63,567 nt of DNA, filler included, from Octopus bimaculoides (GCF_001194135.2; 7 parts of 6 records of this genome joined end to end with filler, not necessarily neighbours in it); one strand, 5' to 3'; shown: positions 13,970 to 19,909, numbered from the whole stretch's first letter. Numbers and translations are program-made. The notes: generated by a model from the letters alone, not told the origin.

Positions 13970-14104
13970 ATGTCAGGCACGAGGCCAAGCATCCCTGAAA
14001 GTTTCATCCATATCCATCAAGCAGTTCTTGAGATATCTTATCTACAGACAAACAAACAAACAAACACAACTGAAAACAATACTTCTGCCTTCGTTAAGGC
14101 AGAG
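13970..14104 (+). CDS. Putative N-terminal coding exon of the ADAR/ADAD-like gene (true start uncertain)
   Basis: Open frame (PKPNQF)MSGTRPSIPESFIHIHQAVLEISYLQ...SAFVKAE ends at a GAG|GTAATA donor (14105) in phase 0, matching the phase-0 acceptor at 14387. An in-frame TAA at 13901 limits the frame upstream; the first ATG is at 13970. Confidence 0.45.
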
Positions 14105-14229
14105 GTAATAATAATATTTTTTTAATTATAAATGATTTTAACATTCTTTTTATTTTACATAAAATATTCTTTACATTCTACCATTGTTTTATTGCCATTA
14201 ATTTACAAGAATTATAAATTTTATGGGTA

Positions 14230-14340
14230 AAATATTTTACTGGGAACGAATTACGAATTATAACATTGCCTCTATGGAAAATTATTGCTCTGCTTTACGA
14301 GTTTTCGCTTTACGAGCAAGCAGTCTTTCTGAACAAATTA
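14230..14340 (-). mobile_element. Fragment of a Tc1/pogo-like MITE in an ADAR-like intron
   Basis: Minus strand CTCGTAAAGCGAAAACTCGTAAAGCAGAGCAATAATTTTCCATAGAGGCAATGT resembles the internal motifs of Tigger/pogo-type MITEs (recognition only). Confidence 0.35.
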
Positions 14341-14386
14341 ACACATATATTGAAGTATTACTGTATATTTTTCCTCTTTCTTCCAG

Positions 14387-14617
14387 GTACCATTATCGAA
14401 AATGTACCAAGGAATGGAATCAGGCCAGAAACACTACGAGAAAAAAACCCTACCCAACCAACCATATATTCCAGGCTTATCAAAAGCGCCGCCCAATTGT
14501 GCCCCAGTCAGCTGCACACTAGCAAGGGCATCAGAGGCCCTTATTAAGGAATATCAATCCAAGGAGAAAAACCCTGTACAGTGTCTCCATGAATATGCAA
14601 GTCAAAGGAAAGTTAAG
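14387..14617 (+). CDS. ADAR/ADAD-like gene exon: linker plus helix alpha1 of the first dsRNA-binding domain
   Basis: Acceptor TTCCTCTTTCTTCCAG|, donor AAG|GTAATT, 77 codons. It ends ...LIKEYQSKEKNPVQCLHEYASQRKVK, which fits the dsRBD start motif KNPV..L.EY.Q. Confidence 0.85.
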
Positions 14618-14794
14618 GTAATTTTTTCAAACTAACATAACTAATATGGATATACATACACCTATTACACACACATATACACAAGTACATTTACATATAT
14701 ATACATGCACATATATACTCACATGCATTCATTCATAGATACATAAATACATATATAGATATCTATGTATGTGTGTGTGTGTATATATATATAT

Positions 14795-15423
14795 GGCCAC
14801 ATTCTAATGCCCCATCACAGCCACATTCTAATGCCCTAGCACGGCCATGTTCTAATGCCCCCAGTGTGACCACATTCCAATACTCCAGTGCGGCCACATT
14901 CTAATACTTCAGCACGGCCACGTTCTAATACTCCAGTACAGCCACATTCTAATGCCCCAGCACGACCACATTCTAATGCCCCACCATAGACACATTCTAA
15001 TGCCCNNNNNNNNNNACATTCTAATGCCCCCAGCACGGCCACATTCTAATGCTCCAGCACGGCCACATTCTAATGCCCCAAGTGCGACCACATTCTAATA
15101 CCCCCAAGCACGGCCACATTCTAATACTCCAGCGCGACCACATTCTAATACCTTATCACGGCCACATTTTAATGCCCCCAGCGCGGCCACATTCTAATGA
15201 CCCCAGTGCAGCCACATTCTAATGCTCACAACACAGCCACATTTTAATGCCCTCAGCACGGCCACATTCTAATGCACCCAGCACAGCCACATCCTAATGC
15301 CCCCAGCACGGTCACATTCTAATACTCCAGCACGGCCACATTCTAATACTCCAACATGGCCACATTCTAATGCCCCCAACACAGCCACATTCTAATGCCC
15401 CAAGCGCAACCACATTCTAATAC
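14795..15423 (+). repeat. 24-bp minisatellite (consensus about GCACGGCCACATTCTAATGCCCCA)
   Basis: More than 20 visible tandem units running into the N gap at 15424. Confidence 0.95.
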
Positions 15424-16373
15424 NNNNNNNNNNNNNNNNNNNNNNNNNNNNNNNNNNNNNNNNNNNNNNNNNNNNNNNNNNNNNNNNNNNNNNNNNNNNN
15501 NNNNNNNNNNNNNNNNNNNNNNNNNNNNNNNNNNNNNNNNNNNNNNNNNNNNNNNNNNNNNNNNNNNNNNNNNNNNNNNNNNNNNNNNNNNNNNNNNNNN
15601 NNNNNNNNNNNNNNNNNNNNNNNNNNNNNNNNNNNNNNNNNNNNNNNNNNNNNNNNNNNNNNNNNNNNNNNNNNNNNNNNNNNNNNNNNNNNNNNNNNNN
15701 NNNNNNNNNNNNNNNNNNNNNNNNNNNNNNNNNNNNNNNNNNNNNNNNNNNNNNNNNNNNNNNNNNNNNNNNNNNNNNNNNNNNNNNNNNNNNNNNNNNN
15801 NNNNNNNNNNNNNNNNNNNNNNNNNNNNNNNNNNNNNNNNNNNNNNNNNNNNNNNNNNNNNNNNNNNNNNNNNNNNNNNNNNNNNNNNNNNNNNNNNNNN
15901 NNNNNNNNNNNNNNNNNNNNNNNNNNNNNNNNNNNNNNNNNNNNNNNNNNNNNNNNNNNNNNNNNNNNNNNNNNNNNNNNNNNNNNNNNNNNNNNNNNNN
16001 NNNNNNNNNNNNNNNNNNNNNNNNNNNNNNNNNNNNNNNNNNNNNNNNNNNNNNNNNNNNNNNNNNNNNNNNNNNNNNNNNNNNNNNNNNNNNNNNNNNN
16101 NNNNNNNNNNNNNNNNNNNNNNNNNNNNNNNNNNNNNNNNNNNNNNNNNNNNNNNNNNNNNNNNNNNNNNNNNNNNNNNNNNNNNNNNNNNNNNNNNNNN
16201 NNNNNNNNNNNNNNNNNNNNNNNNNNNNNNNNNNNNNNNNNNNNNNNNNNNNNNNNNNNNNNNNNNNNNNNNNNNNNNNNNNNNNNNNNNNNNNNNNNNN
16301 NNNNNNNNNNNNNNNNNNNNNNNNNNNNNNNNNNNNNNNNNNNNNNNNNNNNNNNNNNNNNNNNNNNNNNNNN

Positions 16374-16448
<75 letters not shown>

Positions 16449-16514
16449 TACAAGTGTGTTTATTCCAGGTATTGACCCCTTGCTGTATATGTCTCTCTCT
16501 CTCTCCCACCACAG

Positions 16515-17831: not shown

Positions 17832-17955
17832 CTTCAAGGCTTGTGTGATGTTGAACAACGAATATTTTGTTGAGGCAGTCGCACAAAACAAGAAAGAGGC
17901 GAAGCGATTGGCTGGTGTGGCTGCCCTCGATAAACTGAACATAAGATATGCCCAG
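17832..17955 (+). CDS. ADAR/ADAD-like gene exon: second half of the second dsRBD
   Basis: Acceptor TGTATTTTCAG| (phase 2, matches the previous donor), donor CAG|GTAGGT (phase 0). FKACVMLNNEYFVEAVAQNKKEAKRLAGVAALDKL carries the dsRBD KKxAK..A...AL..L motif. Confidence 0.92.
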
Positions 17956-18034
17956 GTAGGTTTTGTTATTCACATGGTTTCAGGTTCAGCCTTAGGCTGA
18001 CCAAAGTCTTGTGAGTGGATTAGGATGAAAGAAA

Positions 18035-18180
18035 CTGAAAAGAAGCCCATTGAATGTGTGAAACTCTGCCAAATTAGATTGGAACCTGGTGTTGCCATCC
18101 GGTTTCACCAGTCCTCAGTCAAATCGTCCAACCCATGCTCGCATGGAAGGCGGACGTTAAACGATGATGATGATGATGAT
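18035..18180 (+). mobile_element. SINE-like repeat, family A, inside an ADAR-like intron
   Basis: AAACTCTGCCAAATTAGATTGGAACCTGG...GGACGTTAAAC(GAT)n. Confidence 0.85.
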
Positions 18181-18617
18181 GTGTGTGTGTGTATACATGT
18201 ATGTATGCATGTGTGTGTTGTGTCTATATAAGTATGTATGTGTATATGCATGTATGTGTGCATATGTGTGTACATACGTGTGTGTACATACATTTGTGCC
18301 CATATATGTGTGTACATACATGTGTACATATTCAAAATAAATGGAAGTGGAGAGACAAGTTACTGAAGAGATTGCAAGAGTGCAATGAAATTATTTAACA
18401 AAAAAACTATATACTGTTTATAAATTAATGAAGGACTGAACCAGTGCGTGTGTTTATTACCGGCAGAATGCCTCTCCCAAGGTTTAATTGTATTTCTTTC
18501 AACACGCGTATCCACATCAAGAATCTTGCACACGAAATACACATACGAAATAAATAAATAAATAAACAAATATATATATGTGTGTGTGTGTCATTGTTTT
18601 ATTTCCCTGTATTCTAG

Positions 18618-18753
18618 GAAGTGATACCAGAAGGTAAAAGTTTGGGCCAACAGTTCACCGACCTCGTATACAACCATCTGTACATGTATCTCGAGCAGTT
18701 TTCAGTCTTACGTTACCGAAGGAAGTCTGTAGCAGCTGTCATCCTTGTATCTG
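18618..18753 (+). CDS. ADAR/ADAD-like gene exon: start of the adenosine-deaminase (editase) domain
   Basis: Acceptor TATTCTAG| (phase 0), donor G|GTGAGA (phase 1). LGQQFTDLVYNHLYMYLEQFSVLRYRRKSVAAVILVS aligns by eye with human ADAR2 LADAVSRLVLGKFGDLTDNFSSPHARRKVLAGVVMT. Confidence 0.9.
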
Positions 18754-19039
18754 GTGAGAAATTCTCTCATTTTCTCTTCCGTTTTTCGACCCCCCACCGC
18801 TTTTATTCTTTTTAATGGTGGTTTGGTGTGAGGTGGGGGTAGGGACACATGTGGTACACAAATTTTATCCCACGGTAAAATTTTCTAATTGACCACCAAT
18901 GAAAAACTGGTCCACGTCATTAATTTAGCCCCTTTGTATTGTGCCCTTGGTCTCTTCTGGTTTCCTGTAATAACACTCTGTCCGGGATTCCTTTTAAATC
19001 GGTAATAACATAATCTCTACCAGATCCCCTTTTTAATTG

Positions 19040-19400
19040 TTGTTGGCACTCCCTCGCTTACGATGTCGAGGGTTCCAGTTGATCCGATCAACGGAACAGC
19101 CTGCTGCTCGTGAAATTAACGTGCAAGTGGCTGAGCGCTCCACAGACACGTGTAGTTCTTGGGNNNNNNNNNNATATTCAGCGTGACACAGAATGTGACA
19201 AGGCTGACCCTTTGAATTACAGGCACAAAACAGAAACAGGAAGTAAGAGTGAGAGAAAGTTGTGGTGGAAGAGTACAGCAGGGTTCACCACCATCCCCTA
19301 CCGGAGCCTCGTGGAGCTTTTAGGTGTTTTCACTCAATAAACACTCACAACGCCCGGTCTGGGAATTGAAACCGCGAGTCCGCTGCCCTAACCACTGGGC
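19040..19400 (-). mobile_element. tRNA-derived SINE-like repeat inside an ADAR-like intron
   Basis: The minus strand begins with a tRNA-like head (GGCCCAGTGGTTAGGGCAGCGGACTCGCGGTTTCAATTCCCAGACC; A-box plus partial B-box). Confidence 0.65.
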
Positions 19401-19782
19401 CTAACAAATACAATAGTTATTGTTATTCACCTGAATGTTTTTGTGGTTCTGTCCATTAGCTTTTCTGCAATGAACGAATATGGGAGATTTGGCTGCTATT
19501 TCTAACAGGACTAGCTACCCTGTACAGGTCTCCTTCATTGCTTCATGCATAGATATATATAACCCTTTAGCCATATCCAGCCCAAATATTCTACCTATTT
19601 CACGTTCGAACTGGCCAGATCTGCTCTGAGGATTCTACCCCTAAATCCCTCCATGGAATAACAGGGTGGGTTAAAATGTGTGGATGGGTGGATGAAAAGA
19701 TGTCAGATCTTTGAAGCCATTCCAAAGCCATTATTGACAGACCTTTACATATCCGAAATGTTTTCTCGTTTGTGTTCTTCAG

Positions 19783-19909
19783 ACAATAAACCAGAAGTAG
19801 TTTCCATGGCAATTGGTCACCAGTGCCTGACCCCCAGCCACCTGAGTACCGATGGTCGATGTCTAATTGACAGCGATGCAGCAGTGCTGGCGTGCAGAGC
19901 CTTTCGCAG
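19783..19909 (+). CDS. ADAR/ADAD-like gene exon: deaminase motif region with degenerate catalytic site; last exon before the scaffold end
   Basis: Acceptor TGTTCTTCAG| (phase 1), donor AG|GTAAAG (phase 2). DNKPEVVSMAIGHQCLTPSHLSTDGRCLIDSDAAVLACRAFR aligns without gaps to ADAR2 [39 protein letters not shown]. Confidence 0.93.

What the first reader, a model, noticed from the sequence alone, without database searches (positions are those of the whole stretch)
13970..19909. Spliced ADAR/ADAD-like gene (two dsRBDs plus a deaminase domain) invisible in the ORF track
Seen: six exons with canonical GT-AG sites. Phases are consistent across 14104>14387 (0), 16665>17832 (2), 17955>18618 (0) and 18753>19783 (1). 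They encode dsRBD1 (partial), dsRBD2 and the N-terminal part of an ADAR deaminase domain. Established: coleoid cephalopods recode mRNAs by A-to-I editing on a very large scale and, besides ADAR1 and ADAR2, have a third poorly characterised ADAR/ADAD-like gene. Inference: this is that third family member, a dsRNA-binding protein likely to modulate rather than perform editing. It is the most important biological feature in the window.
Basis: partly seen in the sequence, partly recalled or inferred. Interest (0 to 1): 0.85.

Follow-up and report, generated by a model that had tools for sequence, protein, structure and literature searches.

The report
Octopus catalytically dead ADAR-like gene
This is the front half of the Octopus bimaculoides copy of a known cephalopod gene for an RNA-binding protein that resembles an RNA-editing enzyme but has lost its catalytic residues; it is real, but already described in squid and annotated in other octopuses.

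Summary
The gene itself is already known.

- **Source.** The window is Octopus bimaculoides, identical to GCA_001194135.2 CM046630.1.
- **Exons.** Five of the six proposed exons (14387-14617, 16515-16665, 17832-17955, 18618-18753, 19783-19909) match the O. sinensis protein 'adenosine deaminase domain-containing protein 1' (XP_029652945.1). Their lengths are identical, nucleotide identity is 93% without indels, and dN/dS is 0.09.
- **Content.** They encode the N-terminus, the start of dsRBD1, all of dsRBD2 and the first ~45 residues of the deaminase domain.
- **Exon 1.**
- **Missing exon.** A 184-nt exon (the rest of dsRBD1) is absent and almost certainly lies in the 950-N gap. The other two gaps are intronic.
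- **Catalytic motif.** It reads DSDAA instead of CHAE. All four octopod sequences compared share this, so it is not an assembly error.
- **Phylogeny.** Trees place the gene in the molluscan ADAD clade with the squid ADAR/D-like protein, apart from octopus ADAR1 and ADAR2.
- **Function.** The squid orthologue is inactive and inhibits ADAR2 in vitro (Vallecillo-Viejo 2023).

The residual value is annotation. In O. bimaculoides the locus is split into a 174-aa 'uncharacterized protein' and a chimeric downstream model, and two published ADAR surveys list no third gene for this species.

The parts
14387..14617 (+). Coding exon (231 nt). The conserved start codon is at 14402 (MYQGMESGQ...). It encodes the N-terminal region and helix 1 of dsRBD1 (KNPVQCLHEYASQRKVK). 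The five codons before the ATG are open, so upstream exons can extend the ORF.
   Evidence: AG/GT boundaries. tblastn to P0039 gives E 1e-41. Same length as the O. sinensis exon. Squid-type proteins and O. vulgaris/O. sinensis X2 start at this Met.
15424..16373 (.). Assembly gap (950 N) that most likely hides a 184-nt exon encoding the rest of dsRBD1 (61 codons plus 1 base).
   Evidence: There is a frame mismatch between the flanking exons. P0039 residues 86-136 have no match anywhere in the window. In O. sinensis the exon lies 59 nt after the orthologous minisatellite.
14795..15423 (.). Intronic 24-bp minisatellite (about 26 copies, GGCCACATTCTAATGCCCCAGCAC) running into the gap. It contains the 10-N gap at 15006-15015.
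   Evidence: TRF. The same array is present at the same intron position in O. sinensis, L002 31519-31886. The 10 N fit the repeat register.
16515..16665 (+). Coding exon (151 nt): inter-domain linker and first half of dsRBD2.
   Evidence: The RefSeq O. bimaculoides model XP_014788866.1 starts at the internal Met in this exon.
17832..17955 (+). Coding exon (124 nt): second half of dsRBD2, including the KKEAK motif.
18618..18753 (+). Coding exon (136 nt): linker and the segment leading into the deaminase domain.
19783..19909 (+). Coding exon (127 nt): N-terminal part of the deaminase domain with the degenerate catalytic motif. GAT at 19875-19877 replaces His394, GCA at 19881-19883 replaces Glu396, and TGC at 19893-19895 replaces Arg400 (hADAR2 numbering).
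   Evidence: Alignments to hADAR1, hADAR2 and ADR-2. Catalytic-column table. Exon structure.
13970..14104 (+).
   Evidence: No Pfam hit. The segment 13395-14137 has no counterpart in the O. sinensis locus. It is absent from every orthologous protein.
908..922 (+). Candidate upstream coding start (ATG AGA AAA AAG AAG | GT), orthologous to the first five codons of O. sinensis isoform X1 (MSKNK). It would splice in phase 0 to 14387.
   Evidence: Pairwise alignment with L002 around position 10001. Exon chain. Both differences from O. sinensis change the amino acid, so there is no sign of selection on the peptide.
9441..9541 (+). Candidate alternative 5' exon a, homologous to the N-terminus of O. 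vulgaris model CAI9744312.1.
   Evidence: tblastn E 6e-12. An intact ATG, GT donor and ORF when joined to 10638-10695 and 14387. 91/101 nt identical to O. sinensis.
10638..10695 (+). Candidate alternative 5' exon b (KEKTTKFHHFTYNVFRNSR), with AG and GT boundaries.
   Evidence: 55/58 nt identical to O. sinensis, against 84-88% in the 200-nt flanks.

Best explanation
Window 14387-19909 holds the 5' half (five sequenced coding exons plus one hidden in a gap) of the Octopus bimaculoides orthologue of the cephalopod 'ADAR/D-like' gene. RefSeq calls this gene ADAD1 in O. sinensis, and it belongs to the molluscan ADAD family. The protein has two dsRNA-binding domains followed by an ADAR-type deaminase fold with no catalytic centre.

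Shown here: His394 is Asp and Glu396 is Ala in the window, and Cys451 is Ser and Cys516 is Thr in the octopod orthologues. The protein therefore cannot coordinate the zinc ion or shuttle the proton needed for deamination.

Inferred: it binds double-stranded RNA through its dsRBDs and acts as a non-catalytic competitor or partner of the active editases, chiefly ADAR2. It would tune rather than perform A-to-I editing. This role is inferred from the squid orthologue's in vitro behaviour and was not tested for octopus.
For: - **Source.** The window is 100% identical to O. bimaculoides GCA_001194135.2 CM046630.1.
- **Existing model.** Exons 16515-19909 translate exactly to XP_014788866.1.
- **Exon structure.** The exon lengths match the O. 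sinensis exon chain.
- **Selection.** The exons are 93.1% identical with no indels, against roughly 78-87% with indels in flanking non-coding DNA. dN/dS is 0.088 over 255 codons.
- **Domains.** Pfam dsrm and the start of A_deamin are found in the window. Two dsrm domains and a full A_deamin domain are found in the orthologue.
- **Catalytic residues.** See the column table and the PDB alignments.
- **Phylogeny.** The cephalopod clade has 100% bootstrap support and sits inside the molluscan ADAD clade (74% and 91%). O. bimaculoides ADAR1 and ADAR2 group with their own orthologues at 99% and 97%.
- **Squid orthologue.** It has two dsRBMs plus a dead deaminase domain and 11 coding exons. It shows no activity on duplex RNA and blocks sqADAR2a/b but not sqADAR1 when added in excess (PMC10278661).
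Against: - Only about 45 residues of the deaminase domain are in the window. C451 and C516 are read from O. sinensis and Argonauta, not from this genome, where those exons lie beyond the window and partly in gaps.
- No RNA-seq junction evidence for O. bimaculoides could be examined.
- The inhibitory role comes from one in vitro study in squid, using excess protein.
- Octopod proteins differ from squid at H394 and R400, so their behaviour need not be the same.
- The squid transcript is expressed at low levels in nervous tissue, which sits awkwardly with a major role in neural recoding.
Confidence: 0.85

Rival explanations
1. Same gene, different job. Like vertebrate ADAD1 (TENR) and ADAD2, it could be an RNA-binding protein needed in germ cells or another tissue, with little or no influence on A-to-I editing. 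The ADAR2 inhibition seen in vitro would then be non-specific competition for dsRNA.
For: It groups with molluscan ADADs and, weakly, with vertebrate ADAD1/2 (37% and 43% bootstrap). Like all ADADs compared, it lacks Glu396. Mouse ADAD1 and ADAD2 are testis-specific and required for male fertility (abstract of PMC7360552). [quoted passage not shown]
Against: The link to vertebrate ADADs is poorly supported. This protein has two dsRBDs rather than one. No expression data for octopus gonad were available. Squid protein does block ADAR2 but not ADAR1, which argues against purely non-specific dsRNA masking.
Confidence: 0.3
2. It is a decaying pseudogene or a gene fragment, a dead copy of an ADAR that happens to keep open exons.
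For: The catalytic residues are lost. The locus is fragmented in the assembly and annotated only as a 174-aa uncharacterised protein.
Against: dN/dS is 0.088 against O. sinensis, with no indels or stops in 769 nt. Full-length intact orthologues exist in Octopus, Argonauta and decapodiforms, several as assembled transcripts. The fragmentation is explained by N gaps.
Confidence: 0.02
3. It is a conventional, active ADAR2 (or ADAR1), and the odd catalytic motif is a sequencing or assembly error.
For: The domain order, two dsRBDs then a deaminase domain, is that of ADAR2. H to D and R to C are each single-base changes.
Against: The same DSDAAVLACRAFRR is present in three other octopod genomes. O. 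bimaculoides has separate ADAR1 and ADAR2 genes with intact H/E/C/C that cluster elsewhere in the tree. The squid orthologue is inactive.
Confidence: 0.01

Closest known systems
sqADAR/D-like of Doryteuthis pealeii (Vallecillo-Viejo et al. 2023, PMC10278661)
   Same: Two dsRBDs plus a deaminase domain lacking Glu396, Cys451 and Cys516. The coding region is fragmented into 11 exons, and the octopus orthologue has the same 11 plus a 15-nt upstream piece. It is the nearest non-octopod clade: 55% identity over the window's 179 residues to a squid-type transcript, with 100% bootstrap for the cephalopod clade.
   Different: Squid and cuttlefish-type proteins keep His394 and Arg400 (DSHAAVIARR). Octopods have Asp and Cys (DSDAAVLACR). 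No biochemistry has been done on the octopus protein.
Octopus sinensis 'adenosine deaminase domain-containing protein 1' XP_029652945.1 / XP_029652946.1, and the O. vulgaris models CAI9744312/3
   Same: Direct orthologues. They show 94.9% aa identity over 255 codons, identical exon lengths, a syntenic locus and the same intronic minisatellite.
   Different: The O. bimaculoides locus is broken by gaps and is annotated as a 174-aa 'uncharacterized protein LOC106882640' plus a chimeric A_deamin+SNF model.
Molluscan ADAD1-like proteins (Crassostrea, Pinctada, Haliotis, Aplysia, Physella)
   Same: Same clade (74% and 91% bootstrap). Similar N-terminal layout with two dsRBDs. Glu396 is replaced in all of them.
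   Different: The bivalve proteins compared (Crassostrea, Pinctada) keep His394 and both Cys ligands and lose only Glu396. Gastropods and cephalopods have lost more.
Vertebrate ADAD1 (TENR) and ADAD2
   Same: A non-catalytic deaminase domain lacking Glu396, Cys451 and Cys516, and an RNA-binding N-terminus.
   Different: They have one dsRBD or none in the Pfam listings and are testis-specific in mouse. Sister relationship to the molluscan clade has only 37-43% bootstrap support.
Vertebrate ADAR3 and C. elegans ADR-1 (functional analogues)
   Same: Editing-inactive family members with two dsRBDs that modulate the active enzyme. The squid paper notes that ADAR3 inhibits ADAR2. ADR-1 also has Asp at the His394 position (Zhang 2023 Table S2).
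   Different: Not orthologous. ADAR3 is an ADAR2 paralogue that keeps all catalytic residues.

Membership tests
ADAR/ADAD superfamily (dsRBD plus A_deamin) | At least one dsrm domain | tested here: met
   Pfam dsrm scores 34.7 bits (cut-off 23) on window exons 16515-17955. The orthologue has two dsrm stretches.
ADAR/ADAD superfamily (dsRBD plus A_deamin) | An A_deamin (PF02137) domain C-terminal to the dsRBDs | tested here: met
   The window holds model positions 1-34 of 329 (19.6 bits, below the cut-off because the domain is truncated by the window edge). The 95%-identical O. sinensis orthologue scores 238.8 bits over positions 1-329. One further deaminase-domain exon was found downstream in the same O. 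bimaculoides scaffold.
Catalytically active ADAR | Zinc ligands His394, Cys451 and Cys516 and the proton shuttle Glu396 (hADAR2 numbering) | tested here: not met
   The window has Asp for His394 and Ala for Glu396. The octopod orthologues have Ser for Cys451 and Thr for Cys516.
ADAR2 orthologue | Groups with ADAR2 deaminase domains in a tree | tested here: not met
   O. bimaculoides ADAR2 groups with hADAR2 and C. gigas ADAR2 at 97%. The window's gene lies in another clade.
ADAR1 orthologue | Z-DNA-binding domain and ADAR1-type deaminase domain | tested here: not met
   No z-alpha (PF02295) hit in the orthologue. O. bimaculoides ADAR1 groups with the C. gigas and Mytilus ADAR1 proteins at 99%.
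Cephalopod ADAR/D-like, within the molluscan ADAD clade | Monophyly with squid ADAR/D-like and molluscan ADAD1 | tested here: met
   The cephalopod clade has 100% bootstrap and the molluscan ADAD clade 74% and 91%. These are NJ trees only; no ML or Bayesian tree was run.
Cephalopod ADAR/D-like, within the molluscan ADAD clade | Architecture of two dsRBDs plus a dead deaminase domain, with a compact multi-exon gene | tested here: met
   The squid gene has 11 coding exons.
Cephalopod ADAR/D-like, within the molluscan ADAD clade | No deaminase activity; inhibits ADAR2 in vitro | not testable with these tools
   Known only for the squid protein (PMC10278661).
Vertebrate ADAD1/ADAD2 orthologue | Well-supported sister relationship and shared architecture | tested here: inconclusive
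   Bootstrap support is 37% and 43%. The dsRBD number differs. The squid paper also reports low confidence, and Zhang 2023 reports ADADs as sister groups of metazoan ADAR1s.

The most novel reading that the evidence does not exclude
Octopods may have gone further than squid in dismantling the deaminase site. They alone have lost His394 and the IP6-contacting Arg400, on top of Glu396, Cys451 and Cys516, yet the gene remains under strong purifying selection. The 'deaminase' fold may therefore have been repurposed as a zinc-free, possibly IP6-independent, RNA- or protein-binding module with an octopod-specific regulatory role in mass recoding. Because the O. bimaculoides locus is mis-annotated, this component would have been left out of editing studies in the reference octopus.
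Probability: 0.15. Interest if true: 0.5.

Novelty: already known. Interest (0 to 1): 0.2.

Why it matters
Coleoid cephalopods recode their neural transcriptomes by A-to-I editing far more than other animals, and the proteins that set editing levels are of real interest. This gene is the one non-catalytic family member in the cephalopod toolkit.

For the reference octopus it is effectively missing from the annotation. It is split into a 174-aa 'uncharacterized protein' and a chimeric A_deamin+SNF model. Two ADAR surveys list only two ADAR-family genes for O. bimaculoides. The practical value here is a corrected gene model and the note that octopods carry two extra active-site losses. It is not a new kind of gene.

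Tried and rejected
- **First homologue search.** The word-indexed search with the 179-aa spliced fragment returned nothing. The exhaustive representative search then found the family.
- **DPH3-like ORF look-up.** An exact look-up to identify the organism failed. The organism was identified later through XP_014788866.1 and its locus.
- **Albertin et al. 2015.** The octopus genome paper is not held in the library. Its statement about three octopus ADAR-family genes therefore rests on my memory and on how PMC10278661 cites it.
- **Squid sequence.** The squid ADAR/D-like sequence is available only as an image in the supplement.
Rejected after homology, synteny and Pfam tests.
- **Rfam.** All hits are microsatellite look-alikes of miRNA models far below the gathering scores, so they were treated as chance. 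ARAGORN found no tRNA.
- **Whole-window repeat search.** It was swamped by N runs and microsatellites.
- **First tree script.** It timed out and was replaced by a faster NJ implementation.
- **Not attempted.** No structure prediction was run. Only about 45 residues of the deaminase domain are in the window, and the question was settled by sequence.

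
Full report
**What is in the sequence**

Joined, exons 16515-16665, 17832-17955, 18618-18753 and 19783-19909 give one open 179-residue frame.
- Pfam finds a dsRNA-binding motif in it (dsrm, 34.7 bits, E 2.7e-8).
- Pfam also finds the first 34 positions of the A_deamin model (E 7e-4), cut off by the window edge.
- Against solved structures the fragment aligns with human ADAR1, C. elegans ADR-2 and human ADAR2. 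Where those enzymes read D-C-H-A-E, the window reads D-S-D-A-A.

Exon 14387-14617 has an ATG at 14402 and ends with KNPVQCLHEYASQRKVK, the first helix of another dsRBD.

**The gaps, tested first as the scan's program asked**

- **15006-15015.** This gap lies inside a 24-bp minisatellite within an intron. Ten bases is exactly what the repeat register needs between ...ATGCCC and ACATTC.... No reading frame depends on it.
- **15424-16373.** The sequence is not frame-continuous across this gap. The exon before it ends in phase 0, and the exon after it begins with the last two bases of a codon, so 3n+1 coding bases are missing.
- **19164-19173.** This gap lies in the intron between two exons that are consecutive in the orthologue's coding sequence.

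**Relatives**

A word-indexed search with the 179 residues found nothing. An exhaustive HMMER search then found a 622-aa protein from an assembled transcript (SRR24189498) at E 6e-59, followed by molluscan and brachiopod 'adenosine deaminase domain-containing protein 1-like' proteins and then ADAR1s.

Searching with that protein recovered several cephalopod orthologues:
- O. sinensis ADAD1 isoforms X1 and X2 (XP_029652945.1 and XP_029652946.1)
- two O. vulgaris models
- Argonauta hians
- a second decapodiform cluster that includes an Acanthosepion pharaonis protein named 'ADAR'

All three octopod proteins carry the window's DSDAAVLACRAFRR. The decapodiform proteins read DSHAAVIARRTFRR or DSHASVIARRTFRR. 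The substitutions are therefore real and lineage-specific, not assembly errors.

**Exon structure and selection**

In the O. sinensis locus (L002, GCA_006345805.1 CM016887.1) only one GT-AG exon chain reproduces XP_029652945.1. Its coding lengths are 15, 231, 184, 151, 124, 136, 127, 168, 110, 186, 235 and 247 nt.

The window's five confirmed exons have exactly the lengths 231, 151, 124, 136 and 127. The 184-nt exon between the first two has no tblastn match anywhere in the window.

The two loci are syntenic over most of the window (window 399-19940 against L002 9453-37965). In O. sinensis the same minisatellite (L002 31519-31886) ends 59 nt before the 184-nt exon (L002 31946-32129). In the window the minisatellite runs straight into the 950-N gap, so the exon is almost certainly inside that gap.

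Across the five shared exons the two species differ at 53 of 769 bases with no indels. dS is 0.27, dN is 0.024 and dN/dS is 0.088. Flanking non-coding DNA aligns at roughly 78-87% identity with indels. The gene is under strong purifying selection.

**The 5' end**

- It has no domain hit.
- The whole segment 13395-14137 has no counterpart in the O. sinensis locus.
- No orthologous protein contains it.

Squid-type proteins, O. sinensis X2 and one O. vulgaris model start at the Met of window 14402. Two other annotated 5' extensions are structurally preserved in the window.
- O. sinensis X1 starts ATG AGT AAA AAC AAG|GT. This matches window 908-922, ATG AGA AAA AAG AAG|GT.
- The O. vulgaris 685-aa model uses two exons that correspond to window 9441-9541 and 10638-10695. 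With intact splice sites they keep the frame open into 14387. The second of these is 55/58 identical to O. sinensis.

Which of these is used in O. bimaculoides needs RNA evidence. They may be mainly 5' UTR.

**Which genome, and what its annotation says**

The 174-aa RefSeq protein XP_014788866.1, 'uncharacterized protein LOC106882640 [Octopus bimaculoides]', is an exact substring of the window's translation of exons 16515-19909. It ends at a read-through stop in the next intron, at 19913-19915.

Its locus (L003, GCA_001194135.2 CM046630.1:5407474-5430855) is identical to window 6532-20051 at all 13,520 compared positions. The window is therefore O. bimaculoides.

Downstream of the window the scaffold is again full of gaps. 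Only one further deaminase-domain exon is visible. The next gene model is a chimera carrying A_deamin and SNF domains.

This explains two published counts. Rosani et al. 2019 counted two ADAR sequences in O. bimaculoides gene models. Table S2 of Zhang et al. 2023 lists only ADAR1 and ADAR2 for this species.

**Family placement**

I built neighbour-joining trees of the deaminase domain with 200 bootstraps and an ADAT1 outgroup.
- The cephalopod proteins form a clade with 100% support.
- That clade sits inside the molluscan ADAD clade, together with Crassostrea, Pinctada, Haliotis, Aplysia and Physella, at 74% and 91% support.
- O. bimaculoides ADAR1 groups with the C. gigas and Mytilus ADAR1 proteins at 99%.
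- O. bimaculoides ADAR2 groups with human and oyster ADAR2 at 97%.
- The link between molluscan ADADs and vertebrate ADAD1/ADAD2 is weak (37% and 43%). This agrees with the low confidence reported for squid.

These are distance trees.

**Catalytic residues in hADAR2 numbering (alignments)**

| Group | H394 | E396 | R400 | C451 | C516 | R401, K519 |
|---|---|---|---|---|---|---|
| Octopods | D | A | C | S | T | kept |
| Decapodiforms | H | A or S | R | lost | lost | kept |
| Every ADAD-like protein compared | varies | replaced | varies | varies | varies | kept |

Only positions 394-401 lie in the window, at 19875-19898.

**How it most likely works**

- **Shown.** The protein has two dsRBDs, with dsRBD2 complete in the window and keeping the KKEAK motif. 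Its deaminase fold cannot bind the catalytic zinc or shuttle the proton. It is conserved under purifying selection.
- **From the literature.** The squid orthologue has no activity on duplex RNA even at five-fold excess. It blocks sqADAR2a/b but not sqADAR1 when added in excess. Its own message is not edited. It is expressed at low levels in neural tissue and gill (PMC10278661).
- **Inferred.** The octopus protein binds dsRNA and modulates ADAR2-type editing by substrate competition or by forming inactive complexes. Vertebrate ADAR3 and nematode ADR-1 are functional analogues.
- **Main rival.** An editing-independent RNA-binding role, for example in the germline, like vertebrate ADAD1/2.

**Verdict**

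Five of the six exons are right, one exon is missing in a gap, and exon 1 is unsupported.

The gene is not new. It is annotated in O. sinensis, O. vulgaris and Argonauta, and its squid orthologue has been cloned and assayed. What this work adds is a corrected partial gene model for O. bimaculoides, an explanation for its absence from two surveys, and the note that octopods alone have also lost His394 and Arg400.

Noticed in passing
window 3304-3549 (-): An intact 81-codon ORF with a CSL zinc finger (Pfam Zn_ribbon_CSL, E 5.7e-24), i.e. a DPH3/KTI11-like diphthamide-synthesis protein. It is intact and 93.8% identical at protein level in O. sinensis, where it lies on the opposite strand inside the first intron of the RefSeq ADAD1 X1 model and is not among the genes called for that locus.
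   Followed up: partly
window 14795-15423, and L002 31519-31886: A 24-bp minisatellite (GGCCACATTCTAATGCCCCAGCAC, about 26 copies) is conserved at the same intron position in two Octopus species, directly upstream of the exon that the O. bimaculoides assembly lost. It is probably the cause of the assembly break.
   Followed up: partly
window 17150-17278: Two inverted tRNA-like SINE fragments form a 58-bp, 86%-complementary hairpin in the intron between the dsRBD2 exons. The 196-nt fold has an energy of -102.5 kcal/mol (z -10.7). This is the kind of intronic duplex that ADARs hyper-edit, and it is probably incidental given how common these SINEs are.
   Followed up: partly
window 167-288, 985-1170, 4023-4150, 12792-13139, 16764-16828, 18036-18181: Multiple copies, in both orientations, of one short interspersed repeat ending in (CAT)n and ...GTTTAACGTCCG.... 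The same element occurs many times in the O. sinensis locus. A second repeat family lies at 1368-1523, 2149-2669 and 13231-13394.
   Followed up: no
L003 17164-23382 (O. bimaculoides, downstream of the window): The next RefSeq gene model (503 aa) carries both A_deamin and SNF (sodium:neurotransmitter symporter) Pfam domains. The 3' exons of the ADAD-like gene appear to have been fused to a neighbouring transporter gene across assembly gaps.
   Followed up: partly
window 908-922, 9441-9541, 10638-10695: Sequences orthologous to three differently annotated 5' exons of the O. sinensis and O. vulgaris gene models keep their ATG, splice sites and open frame in O. bimaculoides. If the exon at 908 is real, the gene spans nearly the whole window and has a 13.5-kb first intron.
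   Followed up: partly
window, many microsatellite sites (e.g. 17000-17068, 18246-18332): Sub-threshold Rfam hits to mir-297, mir-466, mir-3149 and similar models all fall on TG/TA microsatellites. I treated them as chance matches.
   Followed up: yes
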